Below are positions 1 to 59,122 of a stretch of DNA of 64,000 nt, piece after piece. Made by a program: the position numbers and the translations under genes. Each line of letters starts with the position of its first letter. Position 1 is the first letter of the stretch. This DNA is from Lepidodermella squamata (lineage: Eukaryota > Animalia > Gastrotricha), in assembly GCA_047495785.1 (NCBI GenBank), contig JBLDXI010000006.1, positions 186,001 through 250,000 on the forward strand, read 5' to 3'. Below the pieces are notes generated by a model. The model saw only the letters and a program-made list of their open reading frames with translations. It ran no database searches and was not told the DNA's origin.

Positions 1-1711
1 TTGGCCAAGCTATTTTCCAACAACATCTCAGTTAGTTCCAAAATGTTATTCCTGGCACAGAGATGAAGGGGAGAATCCCGACCAGTTTTGACCTGGGCGA
101 TGCCTTGAACCCCAGAGTTGATCAAAAGCTTAGCTATTTCAATCTTCCCTTGATCGATTGCCGCGACTAGAGCCGTCCTGTTGAATGGATCGAGCTCGGC
201 AAAGTTGAATTGATGCAGCAGGAACATGTCGATGGCTTCAATGTTATCCGCCTCAATCGCCAATTGAATCGCATTTTGCCCAAGCTCGTTCTTTGCCGCT
301 TTGTCAGCTCCATGGCTGATCAAATAGGTAATCAGTTCAATAGGCTTCTTCTCATAAGTCGCGACTAGGAGGGACGAAGCGCTGCCCAACTGGTTTTTCG
401 CAGGGAAAGTAGGCCGATTAATATCGACGAACAAATTAGGCAGGCGTAGTAGGTAATCGACATAAGCCGGGTGATTGGCGAGATGAAGAGCCGAGAAGCC
501 ACGTCGATCAACCGCGGAAGGATTCGCGCCAAATCGAAGCCGCAGCCGTTCAGCAAAATCGCGAGATGAAACCATGGAGGCGATTAGGAACGGGGTCCGG
601 CCGAGAAAATCGCCAGTTTCGATGATGCGTTTGCTCCGTCGCCACAACATTTCGATGATTGAATCGTCTGTTTCGATAGAAGATTTATTCGAACTACTTG
701 CTAGAACGTGTACAGCTGTTCCACCGGTTGAGTCTTGAGACAAAACATTTACCTTGGGCTGTTGCAAGAGAAGCTCAATGTACCTATGCTCAATAATTGT
801 GAGAAGCATTACAAATGGGCTTGGAAATTGTCTTACTTTTTCTGGCGGTGAAAAGCAGCGGCATGGAAGGGACTTCCATTAGTCTTCTGTTTGCCGTAGA
901 CACAATTTCCAATGGTCAAAGTTTCCGGAGATAATTTCTCAAGCATTTTGGTGGCGAATTCAACTGACCCACTGGCCGCTGCGATACAAGCTGGGACTTG
1001 CCCCAAGTTATCAATAGAAGTCGCATTGAACAGGTCACTGCTTGCAAAATCAGCAATATTCTGTTGAGCAGCCAAATGGGAAATCGTTAGGCCTGATCTT
1101 GTTTTCGCAGAAGCTAGCTCTTTGTCTGCATTGATCAAAGCTTTCAAGCAATCGAAATTCTTCCTTAAAACAGCTCGATGGACGATTTGGAGACCGTCTC
1201 GATCTTCATGGGTAAGATTCGCGCCATGCTTCACCAAAGTCGCAATGACATCCGCCGATTTTCCCGAATTGCAAGCGTGGAAAATTGGCGTTTCCCCAGC
1301 TGCATTCTCAGCCTCCGTTAATTCAGCAACAGGTTTCTTCAATTGAGGAGCAATTTTGAGGAGATGGTCGACCATTTCAGCCTGGCCGTTGGAGATAGCT
1401 AGATGAAGCGGCTGTTCCTCTGAACTTGCGGTCTTTGCGCTGAAATCGGCGCCCTTCAGGCTCAGGAGTTCAACTACCTTAGCCGAGCCGTAGAAGGCAG
1501 CTAGATGTAGTGGCGTAAAGCCTGTTGAATTTGCGAAATTGACCCGACCGGAAAACTGCTCATCCAGCAGCTCCTCAGTCTCAGCTGCATCATCGGCTTT
1601 GATTGCATTGAAGAGTTTTTTGAAGGCCTCAGCGGAAGGCTGCTTGCTATCTGCAGCAACCGATATGAATAGAGTTGCGGTAAACAAAAAGCCAAGTTTC
1701 AACATTATCAT
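1..1711 (-). CDS. Multi-ankyrin-repeat protein with predicted signal peptide, running off the window edge
   Basis: ATG 1711 gives MIMLKLGFLFTATLFISVAA followed by ANK motifs (GFTPLHLAA, EQPLHLAI, GETPIFHAC). A 53-bp GT-AG intron (784-836) joins in frame to an open exon with more repeats (GRTPFLIA, GFSALHLA, RDSPLHLCA) down to base 1. Confidence 0.85.
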
Positions 1712-21221: not shown

Positions 21222-23693
21222 TCACAAAGGTAGAGGGGTTGTTTTTCGATACGCCATTCTTTCCCAGCCCGTTCTAACCAACGGGTAGAAAAACGTGAAT
21301 GACGTCACAGCCGACATAGCTAGACACCCGAATGCGATAACAATTTGCTGTTTAACAGGCGATTGTACAACAACGATGACTAAAATTGTCGCCATTAACA
21401 AAATGGCTGCGTTGTTAGTCGCGTATTTGATGCAGAGGTGCTCGGGGCACTCGACATACCGCGCAGTTTGGCTAATTTGATACAAGCACAGGACAGCTAC
21501 GCCTAGGATTAGCAGATGTAAGAAGCTGATGGCGAGCACCCACGCTAGGTTGTGCTTCGACCGGCAATACGCAACCGATGTTTCGATGTAGGTATCAATT
21601 TCAGGAAAATAAGCCGTCTCATCTTCGACCAGGGTTTTAAAGCATTTCAGCGGATCACACAACAGCCAAATACCGACGATGATCACCTTGATAACAATGA
21701 ATCCTACCGCCCCTCCAGCGGCGACTTTATCGGTTTCTAGCAGGATATTACCGGGCATACGAACCGGGCCGCAAGAGGTGTCTGGCCGTTCCTCGGGGCT
21801 CTGAACCCTTAGAATGGTCAAATCTTGCGGCAAAACTGGCACCGGGTTAACCAGGATTACACTGTTCCTAGGCGGCGGGAAGGCTAATCGGAACTTTGTT
21901 GTTACTCGATCAGCCGGTTTCCGTTTCAGCTCGGTCATATGCATGGTAGGGAGGTTGCGTATCTGAAAATTCCGCATCTCCCCCGATACAGTTAGCACTC
22001 TCAAAGCAAGTATGCTGTAGACAAATTCCAGACCGGAAGCGAGTGACACAATGCGTAGGACCCAAGATTGGAATGGAGCTACTGAAGTCGGCATGGCGAA
22101 TGCGACAGCAGCTGCGTCAAGTAACAGACACCCGACGTAGCCGAGGCACTTCGAGCGTGGGAAATAAAATTCTTCCTTCCGTCGTAACCGCAATGTCACG
22201 AAAAGTGACGCAAGCTGCAGCAGACCTAGAGCGATCGAGATCGAGTAAACTGACTTGAAAATGTCCTCCCCAACCTCCGTAGTCACATTCAAAACCCGAC
22301 GCCTGTCATTAGGCGGTTTCCCCTTCCAATCAGTCCAGTTGAATCTCATGTTTGAAACTGAGATAAAATTGCGAAATTCACTCGCATCCGTATCTGACTT
22401 GTGCAGAGTCTTTTGAATGGAGAATAAAGACCTCGTCTTAGGGTTGTAGTAAGATATTGTTCCACCATCCGCATTCAACTGGCCGTATTTGTTGTACCTC
22501 AAAGGGCCGATTCTCAGGCCATTAACCGTGGAATTTGCAAGGGTTTCATTCACAATTCTCGCAATAACATTAGGTTGTTTCGGGTAATCTCTGAGAGATA
22601 AATTTCGAGAATTCAATACCTTCTCCGACTGGTCGAGGGTAATGAGGCCTTTAAGGACTGTATCATGACAAAGAACTCGGAAATCGTAATCACCTGGCCT
22701 GGAGTAATTAAGGTAATTACGATCGAGATAATCGTCAAATTGCCTCATCGTGTAATTAAGATGGCTTTTTACGCCATCGTCATAGCTCATTAGCAATGGT
22801 CCGACCCAAAATACGTATTTAAATTGTTCGAGAATCGTCGCGCGTGGGCAACCGGGTAAAACAGGGTCTGGTAGCTGCGCCGGATCTATGAAAACCACCG
22901 AGTTAACAATGAAAGCATAGCGAGGGCCTTTCAGGCCGTATTTATGGGCAAAACATAAAAATCCATAGATTAGCCGATCGGTCGACATGTAACTAACAAT
23001 GATTCGAGCATCACTCGCAATTAGACCAAGCATTGAATCTTCGTCAACCTCGAGTACAACATTGAAATACGAAATTTCGATTGAATTAGCAACGGCAGCT
23101 CTTTGAAGCACCAAAGCTGTAGTGTAGTCGTTAACATTCCCAGCATTTGTTAAAACAGCTATCTTTCGCCATGTGGGGATGTCTTTCAGAAAATGAACAA
23201 TAGTAAAAGCCAGGGTATTGCCGCCAGATAGCATTAGGTTCAAATTCGGGAATCTGTTCCGATCTAGAAGAATCGGAGCCGCGCATAAACTGCTAATTTC
23301 AACTTTGTTAAGGTGGTGTAAAATCGGCCCAACTGCCTTGCAGCCAGTCGATAGGTAAGGCCCGAGAACTATAGGGCTCTCATAGGTATTGTTCGACGCA
23401 TTTCCAAGCTCAAAAGTCCGGCCGAACTCGATGACGTGTCTCGGAGGCAATAGACCAAAACCCTCGTCTTCAAACGTCATTTCGACGGTAAAATCAGGCA
23501 AAATTTCGGCGTTTTGGTTGATTTTTGCGACGACGAAATCAGCTGCAGCTCGACACGCCTTGCCATTGTCCACCTTCAGCCCGCCGTATTGAACAATGTT
23601 CAGTATTTTAAGAATATTTGGCTTCACCAACTTGGACTCGGTAGCAGAGACATTTAAAACAAAAATTGGAAAGATTACAAAAAATATAAGCAT
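21222..23693 (-). CDS. Intronless class C GPCR, GABA-B-like
   Basis: 823-aa ORF with signal peptide, VFT motifs (KINQNAEILPDF, LLDRNRFPNL) and 7TM (WLLCDPL...YCRS). Shares lineage motifs with 2766-5126 (FLCFAH..G..GP.Y.F). Confidence 0.88.
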   Translation of the reverse strand: MLIFFVIFPIFVLNVSATESKLVKPNILKILNIVQYGGLKVDNGKACRAAADFVVAKINQNAEILPDFTVEMTFEDEGFGLLPPRHVIEFGRTFELGNASNNTYESPIVLGPYLSTGCKAVGPILHHLNKVEISSLCAAPILLDRNRFPNLNLMLSGGNTLAFTIVHFLKDIPTWRKIAVLTNAGNVNDYTTALVLQRAAVANSIEISYFNVVLEVDEDSMLGLIASDARIIVSYMSTDRLIYGFLCFAHKYGLKGPRYAFIVNSVVFIDPAQLPDPVLPGCPRATILEQFKYVFWVGPLLMSYDDGVKSHLNYTMRQFDDYLDRNYLNYSRPGDYDFRVLCHDTVLKGLITLDQSEKVLNSRNLSLRDYPKQPNVIARIVNETLANSTVNGLRIGPLRYNKYGQLNADGGTISYYNPKTRSLFSIQKTLHKSDTDASEFRNFISVSNMRFNWTDWKGKPPNDRRRVLNVTTEVGEDIFKSVYSISIALGLLQLASLFVTLRLRRKEEFYFPRSKCLGYVGCLLLDAAAVAFAMPTSVAPFQSWVLRIVSLASGLEFVYSILALRVLTVSGEMRNFQIRNLPTMHMTELKRKPADRVTTKFRLAFPPPRNSVILVNPVPVLPQDLTILRVQSPEERPDTSCGPVRMPGNILLETDKVAAGGAVGFIVIKVIIVGIWLLCDPLKCFKTLVEDETAYFPEIDTYIETSVAYCRSKHNLAWVLAISFLHLLILGVAVLCLYQISQTARYVECPEHLCIKYATNNAAILLMATILVIVVVQSPVKQQIVIAFGCLAMSAVTSFTFFYPLVRTGWERMAYRKTTPLPL

Positions 23694-24437: not shown

Positions 24438-27022
24438 CTAGGATCGTTGCGAATTAGCTAAATCAACCACGATTTGGTTATTTACAGGTAAGGGGGCGTC
24501 TTTCAACGAAGACGTCATGGTGACAGTTTGTTGCTGCCCCATTTGCAGTTGCTGGGCCAACTGACTAGCCGCAAGAGCTGCCTCCAACTCGTTCCCAGTC
24601 CCAGCAACCATAGCCTCAAGGGACGCTTTCCGTTGCGTCGCAGCTTCTTGTTGCCTGGCTACCTCTAACATTGCATTATGAACAGCAGGAGTTACGACTA
24701 GCAACGCAATGGTTGACGTCAGGGTTATGATGACGAACGCCCAGAATAGGATGCGGTCGACCGCCCTAGCTAAGGACTGCCATTCCCGTAGAGATCGCGC
24801 TGAATCCGCTTCAAGAGCGTATTGGCTGGTCAAACGGTCTATCGCATCGGCGATTTCTTCGTACAACCGCTGAATCCGGCTCGAACAGTTTGAATTGTAG
24901 GGCGGCATGTAGCCGTTGAGGCCAACAGCGTTCATAACTCGAGGCATCATCGACGGCGCGAAGGATTGGTACTTGGTACCGCCGATGCTTCGGATAGGCG
25001 AGCGGTGTTTGTTGAATTTGTTGAGTGAACCGAACTCACCGGCGTCTAACAGCTCTTCATTTTCGCTGTCGAAGAAGTGCTTATTCGCGTAGTCAACAAA
25101 CGTGTCCCTCGCTCGGTTTTTCTGCTGTTGGTGGTGGTTCAGCACGTACATTGACATTTCGCTCGGGTCTTCGAAGCCGGATGGCTGGAAACCGCGGTTC
25201 ATGTGCACGACCAATTCGTCGCGATGAGGCGTGGCTGAGGGTGGTGGAGCTGGTGGGAATTGGTCGTCGATTCCGCCGAACATCACCATGGACTTACGGT
25301 AACGAAGTAGGTTGTTCTCAACACGTCGTATGGCCTCATCTGCCGGGCTGATTTCTTGGCTTGCTTTCAGGTCTTCCTTATTGCAGAAACGGATTAGGAG
25401 TCGGGCGAACTTCGGGGGTCGCCGTTTGACACCCAATGATGGTCGGTAGTGAAGACTTAGGACAAGGACAGTGAGGCAGACGGAAATTGCTGACATTGAC
25501 ATGACAGCAGTGAGGTAGATTGAAATGAGAGGAATAAACTCTGAAAAATAGCATTAAGGAGGAATTTTTGTAAAAAATTCAAATTACTTACCGCTGGTTT
25601 CTGGGAGCTTTTCTGTCACGGAAAGCATAAACACGGAGAAAGAGAGGAGTACCGTGATTCCGAGCTGAAAATGGGCAATTTATTTCGAATGACTCCTCAT
25701 GTTGACTATGACTTACCGCGCATTTTTCTCCCGAATCTGGAGGTAGTAAGAAAGTGAGCAATGTTAGCGAAGACATGATGAAAGTTGGGAAAAACACGTT
25801 GAAGAGGTAGTAGAGCGTCTTGCGGCGCATGTTTATGTAGAAGGTCAGGTCGATGTAAGGCTCTTCGCAACAAGTGTATTTGACCACGTGGCGGACTTGG
25901 TACGCCGATAGCACGTCCCATTCTCCGTTTAGGACGAAGCGGCTCAAATCGACCTCGCCCACACGACCGTGTAGGTCGACCTTCCAGCCATCGTAAGTCC
26001 AACTTCCGAATTTCAATCGACATTTCTAAATTAAAAAAAGTGGGTCATTTTCTTAGAAAAATAAAAGATATAACCTAATTTATTATTCAAATTAAACAAC
26101 CGTAAAAATCGTGAATATTCAAATTAGTTACCTGAGTATCGAAAGGGAAATAGGTCACATCAATCTAAGGAGAAAATTTACGAATTATTTGTGTTTAATT
26201 ATTGGCTATAATCACCGTGCAAGAACTGTAAAGCTTGACCGGGACGCCTAGGAAAACATTCCCATCATGGCTGATCATCGCTCGAATATCGACAGGCTTT
26301 GTCGCATAATCAGCGGCACTGTTACCAAAAAAACATAGGATGATTGATGATTTTATTCCAAAGCTCACTTGTTATAAAGCACCTATGTGAAAAATTATCT
26401 CAATTAGGATGAATGCTGAAGAAATGTTATAAGCTTACGATATCAGGCGTCCAGATTCTACCGGCTGGTATTCGAATCGTGTAAATACCGCCAAATCTAG
26501 CCGGATCCCAGTTTAAAAATTCGTCGGTCTTGATCGGAAATAAAATCCATTAAATTCGTGAACAAATACTAAAATAACGACAAATACGTACCCACTCGTG
26601 ATCTATCCAGACATTTGTAATAAGCATTTGATTTTTCTGTTCGAAACAAATTAAAAAATTTAAATAAAACTCAAAAGTGATAAATTACCTCATCCAATTC
26701 GAATATTTGGTTAACAGCTAGTCCAAGCCCGATTTTAATGATCGTCGACGAATTTTTGACTGGGCGAGTTAGAGGGTTGTAGTGCCGAACTGTGGGAAGA
26801 GAATAAATTTCGAAATATTTAATAAATTTTTAAAATACTCACGAATTTCACACAGCAGTCTCTGCTCATCGGGTATCTAAAAATATCGCGAAAATTTCAG
26901 ATTTTTCGTCGAAAAAGCTTTGTTGTAGTTACCCTATCAGTGTTTCGAGTATCGCACGGGGCTGATGTGGCGATTTGAAAATTTGAAAAAACAGCGAATA
27001 AAATAGCTGTTACAAATAGCAT
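24438..27022 (-). CDS. Nicotinic acetylcholine receptor alpha-type subunit (multi-exon)
   Basis: Signal exon MLFVTAILFAVFSNFQIATS; WTPDI-VLYNNA; Cys-loop SSCT-IDVTYFPFDTQ-KC; GSWTYDG; loop C YTCCEEPY with vicinal cysteines; M2 LPPDSGEK..LGITVLLS; M4 VDRILFW. Confidence 0.92.
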
Positions 27023-31798: not shown

Positions 31799-32226
31799 AT
31801 GAATAAGTTGCTGCTTATCGCTATTGTCGTTGTAGGTTCTATGCTGTTTTCAATTACAATCTAATAATTGTGTTACAGGCATCTGTCACTAAATGGACTG
31901 CAACTGCGGGTGAAAACGTGGCATTAGAAGACGCCCGAGAGATTGAGCAGCTTCACTCTCTGGCACGCGAGGAGGCATTGCACGAAGCGGCTCGATTCCA
32001 TGGTTCCAAGAGAGAGGACACAAAGAAGGACGGGAAGAAGCACGACGACAAGCACGACGTAAAGAAGCACGATACAAAGGACGAGAAGAAGCACAACACG
32101 AAGGACGGGAAGAAGCACGACGACAGGCACGACGGAAAGAAGGACGCAAAGAAGGATGACTGGAAGCACGACGAAAAGAAAAGCGGAAAGAAGCACGACG
32201 ACAAAAAGAAGGGCAGTAAGAAATAA
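31799..32226 (+). CDS. Secreted Lys/Asp/His-rich repeat protein, paralog of 29485-30372
   Basis: MNKLLLIAIVV, a 47-bp intron (31832-31878), a homologous ENVALEDAREIEQL..L.REEAL segment, then KKHDDK-type repeats. Upstream and 3' flanks are also homologous. Confidence 0.8.
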
Positions 32227-32566: not shown

Positions 32567-33181
32567 TCCTCTTCTCACCGATCAGTCAATTTGCGCGCAC
32601 TGTCATCGACGAGCGCGGCTCTCCGGAGCTGGCCCGTGCGTTGTTGCTAATTTTTCTTGACTCTTAATTCATAAAATTTCTTTTATTACTGGCCAGGGTG
32701 CGAAGTACAGGGGTGCTGAGGTGTTGCGACACTCCATCTCTGGGACTTCAACCAGAGTAAGGCTGAAAAACAATAGGGGTACCATTAGGTTTCTTCAGCC
32801 TTTCTTCCGCTGGGTGCTAATAGAAAACAACTCAGCTCCCGGATCCTACTTCGCACACTGTTACTGGCCCTTCTGACGATTTAAGATTTACTACGATAAT
32901 TTACTGAGATTCTAACTCAATAAAAGATGTTTATTTTTCATGTTTTTAGGTTTCAACAAGATGAATTTGCTGGAATTGCTCCTCGCGACCTCAGCAAATC
33001 GGCCAAATCGATTTTGTTGTCGTAAATAACCCAATAATGAGCTAGAATACCTTTTTGCCCCTCTGACTAGCAACAGTCGAACTAATTCAATTACCTGCCC
33101 ATTCCCAGCCGCACACATCAAAGCCGTCCAGCCATGGTAATCTTTCCTGGGATTCACATCTGCTTCGCGATCCACGAACAG
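32567..33181 (-). pseudogene. Degenerate partial duplicate of the terminal ankyrin exon and 3' flank of the 33814-36544 gene
   Basis: DREADVNPRKDYHGWTALMCAAGNGQV matches DRGADVNSREDFYGRTVLMYAAGNDQV. Internal repeats are missing and the end is frameshifted. Flank 32567-32693 matches 33615-33730. Confidence 0.75.
32694..32860. mobile_element. 167-bp hAT-type MITE
   Basis: TIRs cagggtgcgaagta / tacttcgcacactg (13/14 match) and a perfect 8-bp TSD ttactggc (32686-32693, 32861-32868). The paralogous flank near 33725 lacks the insert. Confidence 0.88.
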
Positions 33182-33813
33182 TAGGATCGGCGTATTTCAA
33201 TTTACCCAAGCTTCTAAATGATACAGGCTTCTAAACGAGGGTAGGCTTATATTTCGGTACTACGGTAACTCGATTTATTAGGTCTTCCATTCGGGTGAAC
33301 CTCAGCGTCCGCCGCTATACAATCCCGTTAGCGTCTTCGACGTCGAAAGCCGCTGCCGTGTTCATGGTGTGGCGGGCTTCTTTGCGCAGTGGCTACGATG
33401 CTATGCTGCGAATGCTGCTCAGTTTGTCCCGCCTGTCGCCTCTGACCCCAAGCCGTTAACCCTTCGTACATCTTCCAACCTTTCTCGGTTAGCCCTCCGT
33501 CACTTTCTCTCTCTTTTCTTTATCCACTTGCTCCGTCTCTATGTGTTGCCTCCTCATGCCTCCAACCTTCCTTGCTATTGACAACCACTCTCCCTTTCCA
33601 CTCCCTCCACTCCACTCCTCTGCTCACCCATCAATGTATTTACGCGCACCGTTGTCAACGAGCGCGGCTCTCGGTAGCTGGCTCGCGGTTTGCTAGTATT
33701 TGTCTTGACTTTATTTTTTATTACTTGCCTTGACTGATGTTTTACTGAAGATGACAACACATTACAAATCCCAAAACGCAATAAAATATGTTCACGTTTT
33801 ATGGTGTTATGTT

Positions 33814-36544
33814 TCAACAAGATGACTTTGCTGGGCTTCCTCCTCGCGACCTCAGCAAATCGGCCACATCAGTTTTGTTATAGCAGATCGCCCAATCAAG
33901 AGCTGTCTTGCCATCTGAATCTCTGGAATCCCCATTTGCACCCCTGTCCAGCAGCAGTGGAACCACTTCGACTTGCCCAAACATGGCCGCGTACATCAAC
34001 GCCGTCACACCATTGTTATCCTTTCCCTCGATGGCAGCGCTGCGATCCAGCAGCAGTTCAACCACTCCAACGTGCCCAGTCTCAGCCGCATAAACCAACG
34101 CCGTTGCGCCATTGTTATTTTTAGCCTCAATGTCAGCGTTGCGATCCAGCAGCAGTCGGGCTACTTCCACCTGATCATTCCCAGCCGCATACATCAACAC
34201 CGTCCTGCCATAGAAATCTTCCCTGGAATTCACATCTGCTCCGCGATCCACGAACAGCTGAGCAATTTGCAATCGTCCATCTGATTGCGTTTGCCCGCAT
34301 GTTACGCTGTGCAGCAGGGTGCTATTTATCGCATACCCTGACCAATGCCGACCGCAGTCGTGCTTCTTTGGGTTGCGCCAGTTCGGGTCGAATTCGCCGC
34401 CAGTGGATTCGTCGATCACCGCAACGATTCGCCGCACTCGCGCCACGTCGTCCGTAAAGGCAGTAACATTCCACAACTGCTCGTAAACTTCAAAGATCTA
34501 AATGTAACAAACAGAAATCAAGCAATCTTGGATGGCATGGAATACAGAATTATGGGAATTCGCTTGAATTCCAATATCATTTCAGTTTTACTCTGATTCG
34601 ATTATTTGAGCTGTGTTGAATGACCGAATGGCTTCCTTTGGAAAACTTACAGGTCTTCGCTGCCTCGAGGCGCAAGAACCCGGCTGGGACCACGCTAAGT
34701 TGGAACGGCACGATATGGTAGAATTTCCTCGAATCTCGAAATTCAGGTTGCATGATATGCTTCGAGTGGCTCCGACGCTGGATAGGCCAGGAGATACGGA
34801 CCCGTTTCGTATCATAGGTAGCGGTCCACAGACTTGATACAACGATTTTGTTAGAAGAATCGACAATCACTTGAAAATGAGTCACCTGATGCTACGCAGC
34901 TCCCAGCCGCAGACCACCTGCCGTTTGCTTGGCATTGACTTGTTGCCTGGCCAATGAGCCCGAAACCGGGATTGCAGAACAATGTCACCGTGGACAAGTA
35001 CAAAGTTGATGTGTTGTTGCTCGTATAATATCCGTTACTCAGCTCAGGAGCAGGGCCGCAGTCTTTATCATACGCATAAGCTCTCTCTGATTGGGATACC
35101 CCGTTTTACTTACCTAATGGGTTGCATCTCCCATTTATCACCGGCCGAAATGGAGGTACGCACGTGGCGATCGAAACCGAGGACGAGTAGGTATAACCAG
35201 GGTCACATTTCACGCTAAGGGCTCCTCCTTTTTCCACTACAGTCCCATGCCTTAGAACTGCGCCGGTATCTTCCGAAGTTTCCGGGTCCACTCGGGTCAC
35301 AAATCCCGCAGATAGGTTGGGCACGGGGCAAGACTGATCTGGTGTGCTTGTCTGGCTGCGAACATCTGTGTTTTCCGAAATCCAATCGAGAACCTTGCAG
35401 ACTCTGCTATATATACCAGGCACGTACCCACTGCACGACACATCGCCGTTGGAAATTATGCCAAGTAGGTAAGTCTGACTGGATTTCAAACACATTAGAG
35501 GGCCCCCGGAATCTCCGAAGCAAACGTCACCATCATCGGCAGCGAAACACATTTTCGAGTCGGTGATGGTGACCGGATTCAATCGGCCGCGTGAATATTC
35601 CATTGAGCAATTTTGGTACGATCGAACTTGAAGATCCAGTTTCCTTGGAATCTCAGATAGTCTGGCTAAAACACGAGAGAGCAATCAGGAAAGGAAGCGG
35701 GAGGACAAGGGCGCAACTGAGGGGAAGGGGATAGGGGGCTCCCTAGCTGAAAAAAATCCACTCGAAATACCTGGTCCGAAATCCGAAAATCCTAAAAAAT
35801 GATGTGCTAGCCCCACCCAAGGGGGGCCCCCTGGCTGGAATGATGGAGAATCACGAAACATACTGTGTGAAAAGTAACCCCATCCGACCGCGACCGCTGA
35901 ATCGCATCCGTCGATGGAATTGGCGGTTAAAGGGTTGGTTTTGCACATTGTACTAGCGTCAGGTAAACAAATCGGCATGATCTGCTGTGACAATCTAGTG
36001 ACTGGGCTCAATAGGCGCAAGAGAGCGAAGTCAAAGTCGTAGAAATTCTGACTCCCGTTGTAAAGTGGATGCACCAAAGGAGGCAGCGACACGACAGATT
36101 CGTAAGAGCCCGCCTCCGAACGAACACTGATATTATGGCGACCTAATAGCGCTTTGATACTGTGCAAATGAAAAATATACCATCGAACAGATAAATTAAC
36201 AATCTCGCGTACAAAATGGGGGTCTCTCCTGCATTCCAAACACAATGAGCAGCTGTAATTAGCCATTGCTTCGAGATGAGGGAAGCTCCGCAGTAAGACG
36301 CTGAGGATTCGCCGCTTCTGTAAATCTCGAGGAAGACCTATAGCAACATCCTGTTTGTGTTGGATAGCATCAATATTGAATGGAAACGAACAAGCCATGG
36401 GTATTCGTTTGGTACTGCTGGATGGCTGCCAGGGCCTCGCGATTTCGCCATAGACGCAGGGTTCACAGCACCGCATTCTTGAGCAACGACTGCTCCGGAT
36501 ACCAGCACAAGGAAGGCAATTGTAAAAACCACCAGAGGTCGCAT
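33814..36544 (-). CDS. Secreted trypsin-like serine protease - 3x Sushi/CCP - ankyrin repeat fusion (7 exons, 722 aa)
   Basis: Exons 36544-36392, 36337-36213, 36159-35864, 35665-35114, 35062-34886, 34832-34651 and 34497-33814 are all GT-AG and phase-consistent. TAAHC, DFALL and GDSGGP are intact, followed by three CCP-like 4-Cys modules and about 4-5 ANK repeats. Confidence 0.85.
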
Positions 36545-37065: not shown

Positions 37066-39404
37066 TCATGTGCCATAATACTGCGTTCCTTGTAGATTCT
37101 CAAGCGCTGACTTGGCGATGTGCTGATCGTAACTCAAGGCTTCCTCCATTATTGCCTTGTGGAATGCACCAAACAGCGGTACGACAATGAGGGCGAGCAG
37201 ACACATGCCAAACCCGATCCAATTAACCGCATAGGCCAGGTACCAAGCACTCTTCGATTGCGCAAGCCGCCTGCCGCTTTCGCTCTTACGGCCATCTTCT
37301 TGCTGGTTGTCTTTCCTAATGGACCCAGAAGAATTTTGCTTCTTGATCTGCCGGTTTTTCGCTGACATGACGCGATGGATTTTCAGCGTAGATCTAGCCC
37401 GGATTGAGTTGTTGCGAGGCGATCGTGATTGATTGCTAGTAACGTGGGAAATACAGTCTTCGAACTCGTCGCCATTGCTCAAAACGTCTACAACAGCGTC
37501 CTCGCTCAAACACCGGCCGTTCTGGATGGCAGCAGCCCGCGTACGGAGGCGGGCGTGGAAACCGGGGAAAAGGCGTTTTGTAATGAAATTAAACACCTCC
37601 GGAATACCCCACGGCGCAGAGATGAACTCCCCTGGATCGACAATTGCTAGACAGATGGTTGTCACGAGAATAGTCATCGCGGCCGCGCAGAGTATGACGG
37701 TGAGATAAATTGTTAGGTAGCAATTCGCCGAGTTCTTCGGCAGTTTCTCCGCGACCATCAGCTCGAACAGGGCGACGGCAGTGAGAGTTGTCACTGATTG
37801 GACGGGCCGATCTACGTAATGCACGGGCACGAGGTAGTTTAGCAGGGTTATCACAGCTAGAAGAATCGTAGGCAGCACGACGGTAAGGACGAAGAATGCG
37901 GATCTACGGCGCATGACTAGCACGAAATGGATGCGACTGAAAGCCGTCCGTTCCCCAGTTCGATAAGTTGCAGAATGGCCGCCCACGCCATCGGATACCA
38001 GCTCCCAGACCTCTATAACAGATAGCTTTAACATGAATCATGCCAAGGAGAGGGCAACCATACCGTTCTCAGCAAGCATGCCCAGAGAGACTGCAGCAGG
38101 TTGATCGTCAGCTCGTATTGCTAGGCGCAGTTCGCGTTCTTGGAATATCGCTGATTCCTAACGGTAACGTAGCCATCAATGAAAATTGAGTAGAGCTAAT
38201 CAATAATATACTATTATAATTGAGCATCGTTGAATGTCGTATGGAAAGAAAGTGTGGTCGAATTTGCAGCGTGTTGAGATTTTACCGGTAGGATGGTACC
38301 AAACGTTGCCTAGAAGAAGAATATCGGCATCAATTTTTGAAAGTTGGGTTTAAGGAATCGCTTACCATCACTGTGCAGCCGGTATGGAAAGGAAGTGTCA
38401 CGCAATAAATCGTCCATGCCGTCGATTGCATTTGAGATCTGCATTGGAGGAATCCATAACATTTCTTTCGGAACGACTATTTCTTTGACTCCGCCGAACT
38501 GTTGAGGCGACCATGCGATCAAAGGATCACGCCAAGTCTAATAAAATATAAGGCACACATAATATTGAGGAAGGCAGTGAAGGCGAGAGTAATTTCGAAT
38601 TTTCAATTAATTTTGAATATTCACAAACAATTCTCAAATCGAAATCTGTTCACTGATTTCATCTTTCATCCCGCGCTTTTGCCGATTTTTCACATAAAAA
38701 GTAATGAATGTTTAAGGAAAACTGTAATCAAACATACAAGCTGTAGCCGAATTGTGGCATGCATTGTTTCGGTGGCCTCGTCCAACTCCTGAACTCGAAT
38801 CAAATAGAGGCGACTTCTCACGACCAGCGTGTTGTTGATGCTCAACGGGTTCATCGGTTTCACAAATTTGTTGTAGCCACCAGCTGCCGTCAGCCTTTTC
38901 AGTAATTCGTATTCAGGTACCTTGGATTTCGCTTCAATGATTAAATAAATTTCAAAATATTAGGACCATTAAGATCAGAAGAGATCTGAACGTTGTTGTT
39001 TGCATAAAGAAAATCAATAAATTCTACTTTCTATTCTAAATTAGCATTAGCTTAATTTGAGGCTTTCATTAATAATTGTTATTACCCTGGTACCATGGGC
39101 TAATAAGAAACATTTTCAATTAAATGTTCAGTGAAGTCACCTATAGGTAATAAGCTACAGTAACAGGTTACCTATTGGTAACAATCGATGGGTGAAAAAT
39201 TGAGATTCTAGGAAATCGTTTTTTTGAAAAATCGTGTGCCGCTGGAGTCTCAAATTGAGCTAATAAATGAATAGAATAAAAATTAAGGGATATTTTTTTA
39301 CCTGAGATGGCGTAGCGTATTTGATCACCGCTGTCCATCGATTGACAGCGACAGGTGTCGATTAATTGGAGCAGTAGGGTGACTAAAAACCCCGAGGCCC
39401 TCAT
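37066..39404 (-). CDS. Divergent Cys-loop ligand-gated ion channel subunit (non-alpha), copy 1
   Basis: Signal exon MRASGFLVTLLLQL; LWIPPMQISNA; Cys-loop CKFDHTFFPYDIQRC; MRRRSAFF-M1; M2 DRPVQSVTTLTAVALF; M4. No vicinal cysteines. Confidence 0.85.
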
Positions 39405-50275: not shown

Positions 50276-50575
50276 TCATTTAAAAAATTTTAAAAGAATT
50301 TTTAAGCTGGCGTTGTTTAGAAATTTCATTAGGGCTGGGCTTTCTCCAGCAAGTGTGCGAAAAAATTCGCTTTTTTTGGTCACAAAGTTCAGATCTGCCC
50401 CTTGCTCGTAAAGATGCTCGAGGGCCCGAACTTGGCCAGTCATAGCCGCCAACATAGCCGGCGTATGCCCCCAGTCATTTTTCGCATTGATATCAGCTCC
50501 TCTTTCGATAAGGTGTTTCATAAACCTGAGCTTGCCCCAGTAAATAGCACTCATCAGTGCGTTTTCTCCAGTCAT
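50276..50575 (-). CDS. Two-ankyrin-repeat segment (mini-gene, orphan exon or fragment)
   Basis: MTGENALMSAIYWGKLRFMKHLIERGADINAKNDWGHTPAMLAAMTGQVRALEHLYEQGADLN. Gene boundaries are unresolved. Confidence 0.55.
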   Translation of the reverse strand: MTGENALMSAIYWGKLRFMKHLIERGADINAKNDWGHTPAMLAAMTGQVRALEHLYEQGADLNFVTKKSEFFRTLAGESPALMKFLNNASLKILLKFFK

Positions 50576-51317
50576 TGTGTGACCACTTTTTAGGCGGGAA
50601 AAAAGCCTCTTCTGATTGGTTGATTCGAATAAAAGCGCGATTTTCAAAAGCTTGATTTTTTTATTGTATAAAAACATTATTTGTTTGTTGACAAAATAAT
50701 TGGTCGAAAAATTAAGAAAAAAATGACATGACGATGAGACGCAGCAGGCGTGACACAAAAAATTGATAGTATAAAAAATATCACCAAGTCATCAATGAGC
50801 GGGCAGTCAACAAATCGATAAAAAGCAATGTTAGACAAAATAATAATTTTTAACGCTAGGAAACATTAACTGTTGCATAGATAAACAAGAACCGTTTGTA
50901 TCAAACTATCACCAAGAATGCGATCACACAGTATTAATATTTTACCTCGAATACTAGTTTTCAAAAACTTCGACATTATGAACTACCAGAGACAATCATT
51001 TTATTGTAAGGAGGACAATAATAGTTCGTGAACTTTTTATAGAATTAAGAAATAGTAACAGAAAAATCATTGAAATATCGCATGAGGCATTTCAATAATA
51101 TGTTTATTTAGCATAAACACGTGATCATTACTTTCTAAAGGAAGACATTAAAAAAAGCTTCCGAGTTCATTTATCTAAACTAAATTCGCACTTCAATGGC
51201 ACAAACTAAGAGAGCAATGCACCATACAATATACGATCCAATATTCAATTAAATCGAATACCGAAATTCGGTAAAAATTCTAAACCGATTTCAAAATTTC
51301 CGAGAGTGATGAAGCAA

Positions 51318-52586: not shown

Positions 52587-54789
52587 ATGGATGACATTCC
52601 GATTGCCAGGGTTCCGGTTGGTAGAAACATGGATGGAACTCCTGCGCTTATTCGAGGGGTCGCAGCAGTCATGAAAGCTGGGCGCCGCAGACCACTACGC
52701 AAAAATTTTTGGGAGCTAAGTAGGCAACAAAAACTGGCACGCTTGCGAATGGCTATTGAAGACTATTTGGCCAAGTTCAAAGATTCACCCTCTTTTCGCC
52801 ATTTTATTGGCGGAGCGGAAGTGGAGCAAATGGAAATGCAAGTTAAAATGAAAGATCTCAATTCTGTTTCAGTGTCAGATCCACCTGCGGAAAAAGCTAG
52901 CTTAAAAAAAGCTAACACTTGCGGCGAGTAAGTTTTTGATATCACCGATACTTATTCTCTAACTAGCAGTCTACAATAAAAGAGTCGCTGATATTCAAGC
53001 TGAAAAAATAGTTCCGTCTCGATCTGCATACCCTATCGCGAAAAAATTGGGGCACAGATACATCTCACGGCGAGGTTTATCAAAGGCGCGGAAATTACTT
53101 TCTACCGGAATGAAAATAAGCGGAGTCAACTTGGGTATTAATTTTCAGAATTAATTGAAAATAACTTTCAAATTTAAATCAAAATGTTATTAGGCGAGTC
53201 AGAGACTGGTGTATACATTGCATTGGCTGAATACTTGGAGAAATGGGTTGCAACCGGTCATTTGCGCAAAGACAGAATCAACGAGATAAGATTTCAAATT
53301 GATGGTACAACGCGCAGAACATCTGTCGGCGAACCTTTAGTTCAAGCGACTATTTGCTTTGTTGCCAAGAAAAGAAAACCTGGCCTCGACGAAGAGTTCC
53401 AATTGGTTATTTACGAGGGTAAAGAATCCTACGAGTCGGTAAGACATTACTTGACACCAATTATTGATGAACTGGTGAAATGGGCAACCGAAGGAGTTGA
53501 AGACGCCAAAGGAAACAAGTACAAAATAAAAATTATTCTTGTTTGCGATTACCCCATGCTTGTATGGATGCAAGCTTGCGGGCACCAAAGTTCTCATCAT
53601 GGATGCATTTTTTGTACCGTCGACTTCAGATTGGGCGATGGGAATGGAGAGCCTAGGCAGTTTCATTTGATAGAGCAAGAGCTATCACATTTGAATGCTC
53701 GCCAGAGAGAGGCTTTGGGTTGGCATGCACTTCTACTCCCAATGTTCAAGCTACCGAGCTCAGCATTTGAAATCGCACCTTGTACGCTACATCTTGAAAC
53801 TTGTATCACTGGATCGGCGTTAGAGGCGGTAAGAAAATGCATTTAATGCTAGCAGTAATTGATTTAATAATGCTAGATGCTGACTAAATTCAAGCGAGAG
53901 CACTTGACAAGTGCATATCGCAACATCGCGATCATCCTTGAAAGAAGTTCGAAAAAACTGACAGTTCAACCATCAACGACAAATCCACAGAAAGTCAGCA
54001 TAACTCGAGCGAACCATTACGCAACGACTAATGTCAGTAACTAACATAATGAGTAATATGTGATTCAACTCTAGATGAACTTTTCAGTCTCTGAAATGGC
54101 TAGCGATGACGGGGAGTTTATTTCAGTACCTGGGACCCAACTGGCACTTGGAAGTTATTCAGGGGCTTTATGGCCGGGATGTTGCTTTCTACAAGCGATG
54201 GCTTCTTGATAACCATCGCATACGGGTAAGAAACAATTGGACACTTGAGGAGATGCAGCTAAAAGCCATAGAGAAAGGTTTGGAAAGGGAGGTGAGTAGA
54301 CTTGAGAAGATTTCAGACAGCGTCATCCTCCTAATTTCAAAAAACTTTCTAGAAAATTCAAGAGCTGCACAACTACATCTTAAACTGTGATGAGCTGCTC
54401 AGGTCTTGCAAACGCGTTTTCGAGCGCATTGATGGAATGGATTTGCGGGGAGACCCGGAGGAGGATTTTGTTGGATTCGAGAATTCATTTCGGCAAGTTG
54501 TCGGAAATCTCACGACATATGCTCACAGTAAAGAATATTGCTTTGGAACAAAATATAGCTTATGTTATGAATTATTTCAGTTACTGCGCACCACGTTTTG
54601 CCACTGTTAAGAAGAGGCATTAATTTGCGGTTGTTGTCAGCGGAATCGATTGAAATTCGACAGAAGCATTTAAAAAGAATGCTGTCTATGACCTGTCCCG
54701 CTCTTAAAGACTCTATCCCCCGCCAGCTAATGAAACTTTTCGTGATGAGAACGAACCAATATTGGCGAAAAAAACTAGCTGGACGATGA
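52587..54789 (+). CDS. RAG1/Transib-like DDE transposase/recombinase (7 exons, ~627 aa)
   Basis: Exons 52587-52923, 52967-53134, 53194-53828, 53877-54032, 54088-54291, 54353-54527, 54581-54789. Motifs: GRRRPLRKNFWELSRQQKLARLR (NBD-like), FQIDG, VCDY, CIFC, CTLHL, TTYAHITAHHV, SAESIE. Intron 1 needs a GC donor or a 1-nt frameshift. Confidence 0.8.
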
Positions 54790-55038
54790 AACAAAAGCAA
54801 AAGAACCAAATAATGTTCCTAACCACTGAGCGCGAAAGATCAAATAAAGTTGAGACTTGTGATAAGATTTCCTTAACCGGTGTTTTAAAGTGACCGAAAG
54901 GCATGCGGAATTCGTGTGTTCATGATGGAATGTGAAATAAACAATGAAACGTGCTGACAAGCCGTATGTCACAACTGGCGCGAACAACTTCCAGGAACGT
55001 GAGGCAGCTGACGCAGGAAAACAATACAGCGGATTCAA

Positions 55039-57178
55039 TCAGCGCGCTCGCGCACTATTTTGACGCAAAATCATTGATAATATAAAATTATGAATTAATA
55101 CAGAAAACACGCTATTGATGTAAAAATTATTTTTGAGACATTTTGAATTTTCGCGCTCCATATTACGGTCCTGAGCCAACCAATCAGAATCCTCGACAAA
55201 ATTGAACTTACAGCTGGTTCTACAATCATGGAATGGATGATGAGCAGCCATTACATGGGATGTAGTAGATTCAGTCGTAGTAACAGCCTGAACGATGGCT
55301 TCTTCTTCGTCCCCAACCGAGTCATCGATTTCCGCAGCTGCTGAATTGTAGTCGAACGCCGAGAAATTATAAATTGATTGTGATCTATATTTTGGCTCTG
55401 CGGCATCCAAGGCGATCAAATAGGCAGACATATCAGCTTCGTCAGCTCCTTTTATCAGTAATAGTTCAACCATGTCTTGTCTCGAAAGCTGCCTGGCTAA
55501 TGTAAGAGCTGTTTGACCGCCTTTAGAGCGAAATCCTAAATCAGCCCCATTTTCGATTAGCAATTTGACCATTTCAATGCTCCCTGATTCAACGGCCTCC
55601 ATCAGAACCGAGTATCCGCGGTGAGAAGTCGAGCTGACATTAGCCTTATGACGGAGCAAGAGCTTCGTAAAATTGAGGTTGCCGTTCTTCAGAGCTGTAA
55701 CAAATGCCGAATCGCCCCACTCCGGTTTGAAGTTGACCTCAAGCTCGCTAAAATTGTCATCTGCAACAATCTCATTTACGAAGTCGTCGTCGTTATTCTC
55801 AATAGCCATAACCAAAACGGCGCGATGGCTCCTGTAATCTAATTTTTCTCCTTTAGCTTTTCTGACCAGCAGTTTTATCATGTTGTAATCATTTATGTTC
55901 AAAGCTAGGGCCATCGCACCTCCATAACCTGTGTAGGCCCCAAGTTCCCCAAGAAGTTCAACAATGTCGAAATTGCCATTTTCGACAGCGGCAGCTAACA
56001 GGTATTCTCCAGACTTGGCATTCACCTTCGCGCCATTTTCTACAAGTTTCCGGATAGAATCTGTGTCGTTTCTGTTTACTGCTTCAAACAGGTCCAGGTT
56101 GAGGTAGGTTTTATTTCCCACTCGATCGATCAGAAATTCGATCATCTCGACGTATGGATCCTTCTGTGACTTGGCGATCCCAAGAATACTCCGACCAAGG
56201 TTGTCTACAATGTTGGTTTTAGCTCCATTTTCGAGGAGAAATCGCAAGATCTCGAAATGTTTCTGCACAACAGCTATCATCGCAGCCGTTCGGCCATTTT
56301 CATCTCTATCATCAATATCCGCCCCACTCTTGACTATAAGCTTGACCATCTCTAGATTTCCGTTGCAAACAGCGGCCTTTAGCGGAAAATCGCCCTCCAG
56401 ATCGATGATATTGATATCAGCCCCATTCTCGATGAGCAGCCTAGTCGTCCTTATAGAATCAGCTTGGACAGCTTTGATCAAAGCGGACTGGTATCTCTTA
56501 TTTTTCTGGTTGATATTTGCCCCGTTTCGGAGCGGCAGTTTAACAACGTGATAGTAATCTCTGCCAGCTACATCCATTAAGAGGCTATTTTCCTCATAAC
56601 CAGGGGCTGAATTTATGTCCGCTCCTTTATCGATCAGCAACTGAAGGATTTCGGTGTAGCTTTCCAATAAACTCTCCGAATAATACATTTTCGCAACCGC
56701 AACATGTATCAGGGGCGTCTTGCCATTGTTAATTATCGATGGAAATTCGAAATTCGGGTCGAATCGGTCTTCAGTAGCATTATTTATGGCATCAATAACA
56801 TTTCGAGTCGATTCAACGCTTGTTACTTTGTTAAATTCACGGTAAATGTCATAAGTTGCCTCTGATACCTAAAAAATCAATCATTTTACTGTTAGTTGGG
56901 CTGGTTAGTGGCATTCCACTTTTTACCTCACATGGCTTGCTTGAGGGATTCCAGCGTCCTTTGACACAAGTTAAATTTAGAGGCGGTTTCCATTTGTAAC
57001 CTGGTGGGCATTCGATGGTTACAGTTGAATTTCCAAAAACTTCCGTTCCGGTAGGAAGAGTTCGATTGTTCGATAATTCGTAGAATATTTTGAATGGATC
57101 ACTCACAACGCATTTCACATTTGCACGAGCATTTAGGAGGGCTACCTCCAAAAAGAGCAGCAGCAGAAAAAACTTCAT
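55039..57178 (-). CDS. Signal peptide - Sushi/CCP - multi-ankyrin-repeat protein
   Basis: Exon 1 (57178-56927) encodes MKFFLLLLFLEVALLNARA plus a C..CPPGY..C..GRW..PC sushi. A 58-bp phase-0 intron (56869-56926) leads to exon 2, which is open into the 549-aa ANK ORF (roughly a dozen repeats) and an acidic/Thr-rich tail. The 3' end is uncertain (possible donor at 55211). Confidence 0.82.
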
Positions 57179-57917: not shown

Positions 57918-59122
57918 TTAATTAGGCTTGACGACAGCCCAGGAGACGTCGGTCTCGATACCACAGATGTTCTTGCCCTTGGGGATGCGGAAGTAGCCAG
58001 CCTCACCTGGAATGATTTATCAAATAATCATATAATTCGCTTGAAAAAAGGTGAAAACATACCCCAGGAGCAGCCCCAGCTGTTGCGGACGATCCAGTAG
58101 TCACCATCCTTAGCATTGCGGCCATAGCCAACGATGACGACGGCGTGGGTGGTGTCAGTAGCCAGAACGTTGGAACCGCACATCTCCCCCTTGAAAATGC
58201 CACTCTTGTAGGCGAAAAAGTCATCACCCTTCTTAACCTTGATGCCAACGTTGACGGGGCCACCACGGAGAGCATCCTCAATCGACTTGATGCTGATATC
58301 AGGCTGACTTGGGTGCCACTTCTGTAGTTGGCCGACAGCGAGAACAGTGAAGCCCTTGGCATCAGCAGACTTGACATTGCAGCTCTGGAGAATAGCGGCG
58401 TAGGGGTAGGAAGCAGGGCCGTTGTAGCCGGTCCTCTTGGTCTGGAAATAGTCATAGACACCAACGGCGCTGCCTCCGTCGCAACCGTTGTTGTACTTTC
58501 CCAGGGAGCAGTCGACAATCTGCTGCTCAGACATGGGCACGGCCCTGGTCTGGCCGGTAGACAGGGCAAGACGGGTTTCCAGCTCGGCGATGCCACCGAA
58601 AGCGTAGCAGGAACCGCACTTCTTCTGGTTCTTGATCGGCACCATAACGCAACGCCAGTCGACAATTACGCCGTCGTACTTCTGATACGGAAGGATGGTG
58701 TTGTCCTCGTTGGTAGAAACCTGGCGGGCGTAGGCGCGAGCAGCGGGATGAACGAACTGCTCGACCGACGGGATCATCGTGGCGTTGGGAGCCTCGATCG
58801 GTTTCTTGGTAGCGAAATACGCGAACTGTTCTTCGAAACTGTCGTGGCAGTTCTCGTTCAGGCCATACTCGACGTCGTTGTCCTTCTTGTCAAACAGGTG
58901 AGCTTGGATCGCGTTCTTGATGACGTCAGCCTGGGCAGCCTTGTGCTCAGCGAGACTGTCGATATCCTTCGGCAGAGGGAACTCCTCGGCGAATTTGTCG
59001 TAGATGGGATGACAGCCTTCGAAGGGCTTGTCGGCGGTTACAGCGGATTGCGAGGCTGCATCCTCAGCGAAAACAGCGCTCAGAGAAGCAGCGGCGAATG
59101 CCACCAGAATGAAACGAGCCAT
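57918..59122 (-). CDS. Papain-family (C1A) cathepsin-L-like cysteine protease
   Basis: Signal peptide; NQKKCGSCYAF, SEQQIVDCS, GCDGG, THAVVIVGYG and RNSWG. Intron 58007-58062, then GEAGYFRIPKGKNICGI...*. Confidence 0.92.

What the first reader, a model, noticed from the sequence alone, without database searches (positions are those of the whole stretch)
55039..57178. A second Sushi-ankyrin gene defines a family with a conserved cap motif
Seen: SP + one Sushi + phase-0 intron + roughly a dozen ANK repeats + acidic/Thr-rich stalk. The segment right after the intron, YDIYREFNKVTSVESTRNVIDAINNATEDRFDPNF, aligns with FEVYEQLWNVTAFTDDVARVRRIVAVIDESTGGEFDPNW in the protease fusion ~21 kb away, and the intron position and phase are the same. 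This independently supports both gene models. Several NxS/T sequons (NRT, NST, NLT, NAT, NKT, NDT) fit a luminal or extracellular location. If read through, the C-terminus has a hydrophobic stretch (FYINSVFSVLIHNFILSMIL) that could be an anchor. Inference: a modular extracellular-ankyrin system with a non-catalytic sensor or decoy and a protease-armed member, differing in repeat number.
Basis: partly seen in the sequence, partly recalled or inferred. Interest (0 to 1): 0.8.

Follow-up and report, generated by a model that had tools for sequence, protein, structure and literature searches.

The report
Secreted Sushi-ankyrin gene, capped array
An unidentified invertebrate genome has an intact two-exon gene that places one complement-type (Sushi) module and about 13 ankyrin repeats, normally an inside-the-cell binding module, behind an export signal. 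The "cap motif" it shares with a protease-fused neighbour is the ankyrin array's own N-terminal capping repeat, and the proposed membrane anchor is probably not real.

Summary
On the minus strand, exon 1 (57178..56927) encodes a signal-peptide-like start and a four-cysteine Sushi/CCP module. A 58-nt GT..AG phase-0 intron follows. Exon 2 (56868..55039) encodes an N-cap, 13 ankyrin repeats and a disordered acidic/Thr-rich tail.

The cap similarity to the protease-Sushi-ankyrin gene about 22 kb away is real:
- BLASTP on the caps alone gives E 2e-6.
- None of 20,000 shuffles reaches the observed score.
- The best whole-array alignment starts at the cap in both genes (E 5e-26).

In the model the cap is the N-terminal capping ankyrin repeat, with FDPN in the place of the ADVN turn. 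It is not a separate module. Both introns are phase 0 and lie in the Sushi-to-cap linker, but they sit four codons apart in the cap alignment.

Three points are weaker:
- The sequons are not enriched (p about 0.1).
- The C-terminal hydrophobic stretch lies in AT-rich sequence, and a second copy in the only public run cannot read into it in any frame.
- No RNA data exist, so the splice junction is untested.

This scan has already noted the same family many times on other pieces of this genome. The closest published architecture I found is Toxoplasma RON9 (signal peptide, ankyrin repeats, Sushi, membrane span). The sensor or decoy role is speculation.

The parts
57122..57178 (-). Start codon and signal-peptide-like segment of 19 residues, with ARA before the likely cleavage site
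   Evidence: Translation. It is the most hydrophobic 19-residue window of the protein (Kyte-Doolittle 1.78). No signal-peptide predictor was available.
56930..57112 (-). Sushi/CCP module with four Cys and the conserved Trp
   Evidence: Pfam PF00084, E 5e-5, 24.1 bits against a cut-off of 20.7. phmmer hits to CCPs of complement receptor 1, factor H and DAF.
56869..56926 (-). Intron 1: 58 nt, GTAAAA...TTTTTTAG, phase 0
   Evidence: Unspliced reading shifts the frame and stops at 56849. There is no RNA support.
56749..56868 (-).
   Evidence: Helices 3-13 and 18-30 appear in both models. The region superposes on the DARPin N-cap. BLASTP against the other gene's cap gives E 2e-6. There is no ATG in this stretch, so an upstream exon is needed.
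55399..56748 (-). Thirteen ankyrin repeats and a closing helix. Repeat 1 is atypically long and repeats 6-10 are irregular.
   Evidence: Pfam Ank families, E 7.5e-58. Model pLDDT 89.9. Foldseek and VIA matches to DARPins, ankyrin-R/B and gankyrin, up to Z 26.8.
55213..55398 (-). Disordered acidic and Ser/Thr-rich tail ending ...HDCRTS
   Evidence: pLDDT below 50 for residues 490-609 of the single-sequence model. Translation.
55042..55212 (-). Doubtful 57-codon extension of the open frame. It includes the hydrophobic stretch at 55066..55125 and begins at a GTAAGT (55211..55206).
   Evidence: GC is 0.29 here against 0.38-0.50 elsewhere in exon 2, and maximum hydrophobicity is 1.65. A second contig lacks base 55210 and closes all three frames before the stretch.
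34378..34497 (-). Homologous cap of the protease-3xSushi-ankyrin gene. It is preceded by a 153-nt phase-0 intron (34498..34650).
   Evidence: Pfam finds Trypsin, Sushi and Ank in that gene's exons.

Best explanation
This is an intact two-exon gene for a secretory-pathway protein. A cleavable signal peptide sends the chain into the endoplasmic reticulum. One CCP module folds there around two disulfides. An ankyrin solenoid follows directly, with no membrane span in between. It has an N-terminal capping repeat, 13 repeats and a closing helix. The chain ends in a short, disordered, acidic and Ser/Thr-rich tail. The product is most likely soluble and secreted, and the solenoid most likely acts as a protein-binding surface outside the cell.

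The gene belongs to a large lineage-specific family in this genome. Its N-terminal ankyrin module (cap plus repeats 1-5) and its last three repeats match, in order, the whole ankyrin part of the protease-fused neighbour. The irregular middle repeats are extra. It differs from that neighbour in lacking the cysteines that follow the cap.

Shown here: the domain content, the open frames, the splice-site logic, the homology of the caps and the fold. Inferred: secretion, the true 3' end and any binding role.
For: - Sushi and Ank Pfam hits pass the curated cut-offs, and the CCP module aligns to solved CCPs.
- Exon 2 stays open for 60 codons upstream of its first ATG, exactly to an AG acceptor. Those codons hold the conserved cap, so an upstream exon must supply the start. 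The Sushi exon does this in phase.
- The other gene has the same logic.
- The only hydrophobic windows are the N-terminal signal and the extreme C-terminus.
- The model has pLDDT 89.9. VIA gives Z 26.8, rmsd 1.6 A over 223 residues to a DARPin, starting at model residue 2.
- The two cap helices also appear, with confidence, in the single-sequence model.
- A designed ankyrin-like protein aligns EAGADPNA with EDRFDPNF.
- The best alignment of the two genes runs in order from the cap (E 5e-26), and the second best joins their C-terminal repeats (E 1e-12).
- The cap-to-cap score of 54 exceeds the best score of this cap against 120 generic ankyrin proteins, which was 49 with a median of 28.
Against: - No RNA run holds the locus, so neither the splice nor expression is shown.
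- No signal-peptide predictor was available.
- The ankyrin part has a single cysteine and none of the cysteine pairs that other notes report for this family, so it may be less adapted to an oxidising compartment.
- The sequons are not enriched.
- No relative with this cap was found in public proteins, though those searches had little power.
- The open frame as assembled does run through a marginally hydrophobic C-terminal stretch.
Confidence: 0.65

Rival explanations
1. The protein is a type I membrane protein. The C-terminal stretch FYINSVFSVLIHNFILSMIL spans the membrane, the basic end RQNSARAR faces the cytosol, and the Sushi-ankyrin part is displayed on the cell surface.
For: The assembled copy has one uninterrupted open frame through this stretch. 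Mean hydrophobicity of 1.65 over 19 residues is near the usual threshold, and the basic residues after it fit the positive-inside rule. Toxoplasma RON9 has a C-terminal membrane span after its ankyrin and Sushi domains.
Against: Six of the 19 residues are polar. The DNA here has GC 0.29, like untranslated sequence. A GTAAGT sits at the start of the extension. A second contig of equal depth lacks base 55210, and in all three frames it meets a stop before the stretch. The neighbour gene ends right after its last repeat.
Confidence: 0.15
2. The locus is not one working gene. Either the two exons are not joined and the ankyrin frame makes a cytosolic protein from an internal ATG at 56688, or the locus is a silent, recently dead copy.
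For: There is no RNA evidence at all. The family contains damaged copies according to other notes, and a broken fragment lies next to the neighbour gene. This copy lacks the cysteines seen after the cap in the neighbour.
Against: A 609-codon open frame is intact. The conserved cap lies upstream of the first ATG and would be lost. Starting at 56688 would cut repeat 1 in half. The donor, acceptor and phase all fit, and the neighbour gene repeats the arrangement.
Confidence: 0.12
3. The secreted protein does not act in the animal's own extracellular space. It is delivered to other organisms' cells (prey, host or microbes), and its ankyrin repeats act inside a foreign cytosol, as with bacterial Ank effectors or spider latrotoxins.
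For: Known secreted ankyrin proteins are mostly effectors or toxins. Latrotoxin structures are among the fold matches. The organism and its way of life are unknown.
Against: There is no translocation or pore-forming domain. CCP modules usually act in extracellular recognition. Nothing here points to a gland or venom context.
Confidence: 0.08

Closest known systems
Protease-3xSushi-ankyrin gene in the same window (about 36544..33814, minus strand) and the Sushi-ankyrin family noted elsewhere in this genome by this scan
   Same: Signal peptide, Sushi module(s), a phase-0 intron in the Sushi-to-ankyrin linker, a homologous N-cap ending in FDPN plus an aromatic residue, an atypically long first repeat, and no membrane span between the parts.
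   Different: This gene has no protease domain, one Sushi instead of three, about 13 repeats instead of about 5, and an acidic/Thr tail. It lacks the cysteines that follow the cap. The Sushi modules of the two genes are not significantly alike pairwise (E 1.0).
Toxoplasma gondii RON9 and its apicomplexan orthologues (PMC3299665)
   Same: One secretory-pathway protein combines a signal peptide, ankyrin repeats and a Sushi/CCP domain. Its location in a secretory organelle has been shown experimentally.
   Different: In RON9 the domains come in the opposite order (six ankyrin repeats, then the Sushi domain). RON9 also has PEST repeats and a C-terminal membrane span. It is a single conserved gene in a protist, not an expanded animal family. 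Sequence relatedness was not tested here.
Designed ankyrin repeat proteins (DARPins) and gankyrin-type solenoids
   Same: The fold is the same, including the N-terminal capping repeat. VIA gives Z 26.8 and rmsd 1.6 A, with model 2..249 on 6moj_A 3..225.
   Different: Those proteins are cytosolic or engineered. Natural ones are not preceded by a signal peptide and a CCP module.
Latrotoxins of widow spiders (PDB 9goa, 7pty)
   Same: They are animal proteins that act outside the producing cell and carry long ankyrin arrays.
   Different: Latrotoxins have a large N-terminal pore-forming part and no Sushi module. None of that is present here.

Membership tests
Sushi/CCP domain (PF00084) | About 60 residues with four Cys in the conserved spacing, a Trp before the last Cys, and a profile score above the curated cut-off | tested here: met
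   24.1 bits against a cut-off of 20.7. Cys at residues 23, 57, 71 and 83, with Trp 76. Aligns to CCPs of CR1, factor H and DAF.
Ankyrin-repeat solenoid | Tandem repeats of about 33 residues, each a helix-turn-helix plus hairpin, stacked into a solenoid | tested here: met
   Pfam Ank_2 E 7.5e-58. Model pLDDT 89.9 with 13 helix pairs plus caps. Z up to 26.8 to solved ankyrin proteins.
Secreted Sushi-ankyrin family of this genome (defined only by this scan) | An export signal, and no membrane span between the Sushi and ankyrin parts | tested here: inconclusive
   The N-terminal hydrophobic segment has an ARA site, and there is no internal hydrophobic window. No dedicated predictor and no experiment were available.
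Secreted Sushi-ankyrin family of this genome (defined only by this scan) | An N-terminal ankyrin module (cap plus first repeats) homologous to other members | tested here: met
   The alignment runs in order from the cap, E 5e-26. Cap alone gives E 2e-6. The score is above any of 120 generic ankyrin proteins. Only one other member could be compared.
Secreted Sushi-ankyrin family of this genome (defined only by this scan) | Conserved cysteines after the cap, said in other notes to staple the cap to repeats 1 and 2 | tested here: not met
   The neighbour gene has Cys in HDC and VTC after its cap. The aligned positions in this gene are not Cys, and its ankyrin part holds one Cys in all.
RON9-like rhoptry neck proteins | Signal peptide, ankyrin repeats followed by a Sushi domain, a C-terminal membrane span, and orthology to apicomplexan RON9 | not tested
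   Only the published description was read. The domain order differs and no RON9 sequence was compared.
Membrane-anchored (type I or GPI) surface proteins | A conserved C-terminal hydrophobic segment that is part of the translated product | tested here: inconclusive
   The segment is present in the assembled open frame. It is AT-rich, only marginally hydrophobic, and out of reach in a second copy.

The most novel reading that the evidence does not exclude
An animal lineage has turned the ankyrin repeat into an extracellular recognition scaffold, a natural counterpart of DARPins, and spread it over more than a hundred genes. Some members are armed with trypsin-type proteases. Others, like this one, are protease-free and could bind the same targets as regulators or decoys. 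Together they would form a previously undescribed humoral recognition and effector system.
Probability: 0.25. Interest if true: 0.85.

Novelty: new variant of a known kind. Interest (0 to 1): 0.5.

Why it matters
Ankyrin repeats are textbook intracellular modules. Engineered ones (DARPins) work well as extracellular binders, but a natural animal family that exports them is not described in the papers I could search.

This gene gives three things:
- a clean two-exon example of the architecture;
- evidence that the conserved cap is the solenoid's own capping repeat, which offers a practical profile anchor (cap plus the long first repeat) for counting the family;
- a cysteine-poor member, which bears on whether disulfide stapling is needed for export.

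It also removes one proposed feature, the membrane anchor, and points to a published precedent, RON9, for ankyrin plus Sushi in a secretory pathway.

Tried and rejected
- **RNA support.** One public run holds the locus. Its contig crosses the intron unspliced with no differences, so it is DNA-like. No junction test was possible.
- **Word search, whole exon 2.** It returned only generic ankyrin proteins at 22-32% identity, none with Sushi, and not the window's own protein.
- **Word search, residues 1-75.** There were 36 candidates and none scored. This is weak evidence, because gene callers that start at ATG would drop the cap.
- **Exhaustive profile search.** I used cap plus two repeats as the query. 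The result was swamped by giant multi-repeat ankyrin proteins, and every best stretch lay in profile positions 57-138, none on the cap. The query was badly designed and the result says nothing about the cap.
- **Pfam on the cap alone.** No hit even at E 10. The cap is recognisable as ankyrin only by structure and by one weak PDB alignment.
- **ESM Atlas on residues 1-130.** Only plain ankyrin clusters came back.
- **Sushi of this gene against Sushi 3 of the neighbour.** Not significant.
- **Sequon enrichment.** Not significant.
- **Alternative splicing from the GTAAGT at 55211.** I listed every acceptor. None gives a convincing third exon.
- **Naming the organism from the neighbouring cathepsin-like gene.** Best hits were 42% identity or lower, spread over midges, rotifers, nematodes, Daphnia and plants, so this gave no answer.
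- **TE or repeat origin of the tail region.** It is not repeated within the window.

Full report
**What is there.** The minus strand between 57178 and 55039 carries a two-exon gene.
- Exon 1 (57178..56927) is exactly 84 codons.
- It starts with a hydrophobic, signal-peptide-like segment (MKFFLLLLFLEVALLNARA), followed by a 61-residue module with four cysteines and the conserved tryptophan.
- Pfam calls this module Sushi above its curated cut-off (24.1 against 20.7 bits). phmmer aligns it with CCP modules of complement receptor 1, factor H and DAF.
- A 58-nt intron follows (GTAAAA...TTTTTTAG). Its length is not a multiple of three, and reading through it stops at 56849, so only splicing joins the two parts in frame.
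- Exon 2 (56868..55039) is one open frame of 609 codons, with ankyrin hits down to E 7.5e-58.
- This frame stays open for 60 codons upstream of its first ATG, exactly up to the AG acceptor. Those codons hold the conserved cap. An upstream exon must therefore supply the start, and the Sushi exon does so in phase 0.

**Fold.**
- A single-sequence AlphaFold run was poor overall (pLDDT 57). Even so, it placed two confident helices (residues 3-13 and 18-30) in the cap, and it left residues 490-609 disordered.
- With 54 trimmed ankyrin sequences added as an alignment, the model of residues 1-495 reached pLDDT 89.9 and pTM 0.76. It shows the cap helix pair, 13 further helix pairs and a closing helix.
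- Foldseek and VIA-align place it among DARPins, ankyrin-R/B, gankyrin, FEM1 and latrotoxins.
- The best VIA rows begin at model residue 1-6 and at residue 2-8 of the solved chains. For example, model 2..249 aligns on 6moj_A 3..225 with Z 26.8 and rmsd 1.6 A.
- The cap therefore occupies the place of the N-terminal capping repeat of an ankyrin solenoid.
- At sequence level, Pfam does not see ankyrin in the cap alone.
- A designed ankyrin-like protein (8fre) aligns its EAGADPNA with the gene's EDRFDPNF (E 0.008). FDPN thus stands where ordinary repeats have the A-D-V/P-N turn.

**The cap comparison.** The other gene (minus strand, signal peptide at about 36544) has Trypsin, Sushi and Ank by Pfam. 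TAAHC, DFALL and GDSGGP motifs are visible in its sequence and its ORF translations.
- Its cap lies at 34497..34378.
- Cap against cap gives a BLOSUM62 local score of 54, against 19.5 +/- 4.0 for shuffles, with none of 20,000 reaching it. BLASTP gives 25 bits, E 2e-6, 11 of 39 identical.
- FDPN carries much of the score. Without it the score is 31 (p about 0.01).
- The similarity is more than generic ankyrin likeness. This gene's cap scores at most 49 (median 28) against 120 generic ankyrin proteins totalling 105,610 residues. It scores only 19-27 against the internal repeats of either gene.
- The best alignment of the two ankyrin parts runs in order from the cap (residues 6-216 on 2-220, E 5e-26). 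It includes a shared, unusually long first repeat.
- The second-best alignment joins the last three repeats of both genes (E 1e-12).
- This gene therefore looks like the neighbour's ankyrin array with irregular middle repeats added: about 13 repeats against about 5.

**Introns.**
- In the neighbour, the exon of the third Sushi ends ...GSCASRQRRP at 34651, before a GTAAGT. The next exon starts at 34497, after a 153-nt intron. This intron is phase 0, whereas that gene's Sushi-to-Sushi introns are phase 1.
- In this gene the intron is also phase 0 and lies in the same linker.
- It sits one residue after the last Cys and five residues before the first aligned cap residue. In the neighbour the figures are seven and one.
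- "Same phase, same linker" holds. "Same position" is off by four codons in the cap alignment.

**Location.**
- The only strongly hydrophobic windows are the N-terminal signal and the extreme C-terminus, so no membrane span separates the Sushi and ankyrin parts.
- If the Sushi module is luminal, as CCP modules with disulfides are, the ankyrin array is luminal too. This is inference: there was no predictor, no RNA and no protein data.
- The ten N-x-S/T sequons are not more than composition predicts (6.4 +/- 2.3, p about 0.10).
- Unlike the neighbour, which has cysteines just after the cap (HDC, VTC), this gene has a single cysteine in its ankyrin part.
This member does not have them.

**The tail.**
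- After the last repeat comes an acidic, Ser/Thr-rich, low-confidence stretch ending ...HDCRTS at 55213.
- The assembled frame then runs 57 more codons to 55042, and these include FYINSVFSVLIHNFILSMIL.
- The extension starts at a GTAAGT (55211..55206). It has GC 0.29 against 0.38-0.50 in the rest of the exon, and it is only marginally hydrophobic (1.65).
- In the one public run, a second contig of the same depth (49.8 against 47.4) shares 55180..55226 but lacks base 55210. It is unlike the window above 55226.
- Translated in all three frames, that copy meets a stop before the hydrophobic stretch. One frame reads ...IHCRTS and then a stop.
- Whether this contig is the other allele or a paralogue, the stretch is not kept as coding sequence. 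I read the anchor as unlikely (about 15%).
- No acceptor downstream of the GTAAGT gives a convincing third exon, so the true 3' end needs cDNA.

**Relatives and literature.**
- Word-based searches found only generic ankyrin proteins at 32% identity or less, none with Sushi, and nothing for the cap.
- My one exhaustive search was swamped by giant ankyrin proteins and says nothing about the cap.
- Other notes of this scan report the same kind of gene many times on other pieces of this genome: well over a hundred copies, about forty of them with a protease. I could not check those counts.
- In the paper library I found no description of an animal Sushi-ankyrin family.
- The closest published architecture is Toxoplasma RON9, a rhoptry-neck protein with a signal peptide, six ankyrin repeats, one Sushi domain and a C-terminal membrane span (PMC3299665).
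- So the combination in a secretory pathway has a precedent in protists.
- The organism could not be named from the neighbouring cathepsin-like gene. The window's other genes (class C receptor-like, Cys-loop channel, trypsin, papain-type protease) indicate an animal.

**Verdict.** The gene model and the cap homology are real. The cap is the array's N-terminal capping repeat. The anchor is probably an artefact of an open frame running into untranslated sequence. Export is well argued but untested, and the sensor or decoy idea has no evidence. The finding is a solid further member of a family that this scan has already flagged repeatedly. Its added value lies in the structural reading of the cap and in the RON9 precedent.

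Noticed in passing
window 55180-55226 and 57483: The public run holds a second contig that lacks base 55210 and diverges from the window above 55226. Another loose end sits at 57483. The gene body is at about half the depth of 54739-55209. The locus may be heterozygous or hemizygous, or it may share its 3' flank with another copy.
   Followed up: partly
window 32914-33181 (minus strand): A broken partial duplicate of the 3' end of the protease-Sushi-ankyrin gene, 70-83% identical in DNA to 33775-34257. It ends with a similar ...LLRSRG...SSC stop.
   Followed up: partly
window 34651-34680 (minus strand): The linker between the third Sushi and the ankyrin cap of the protease gene reads SRQRRP. 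This is a dibasic R-x-R-R motif of the kind cut by proprotein convertases, although Pro follows it. This gene's linker has no such motif.
   Followed up: no
window 50276-50758 (minus strand): A short open frame with two or three ankyrin repeats (Pfam Ank E 8e-12). No cap, Sushi exon or signal peptide is seen upstream. Its relation to the family is unknown.
   Followed up: partly
window 2766-5126, 13661-16168, 21222-23693: Three large open frames with the ANF_receptor ligand-binding region. One also has a class C seven-helix domain. They form a small cluster of class C receptor-like genes.
   Followed up: no
window 24438-25502 and 37066-38034 (minus strand): At 24438-25502, an open frame with a Cys-loop channel transmembrane region by Pfam (Neur_chan_memb, E 1.5e-6). 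At 37066-38034, an open frame with several hydrophobic stretches that looks like the same kind of region from its translation; it was not scanned against Pfam.
   Followed up: no
window 58028-59122 (minus strand): A divergent papain-family cysteine protease gene lies directly upstream of the Sushi-ankyrin gene. Its best public relatives are only 42% identical or less.
   Followed up: partly
window 31870-32226 (plus strand): An open frame rich in repeated K, H and D residues (KKHDDKHD-type low complexity) of unknown meaning.
   Followed up: no
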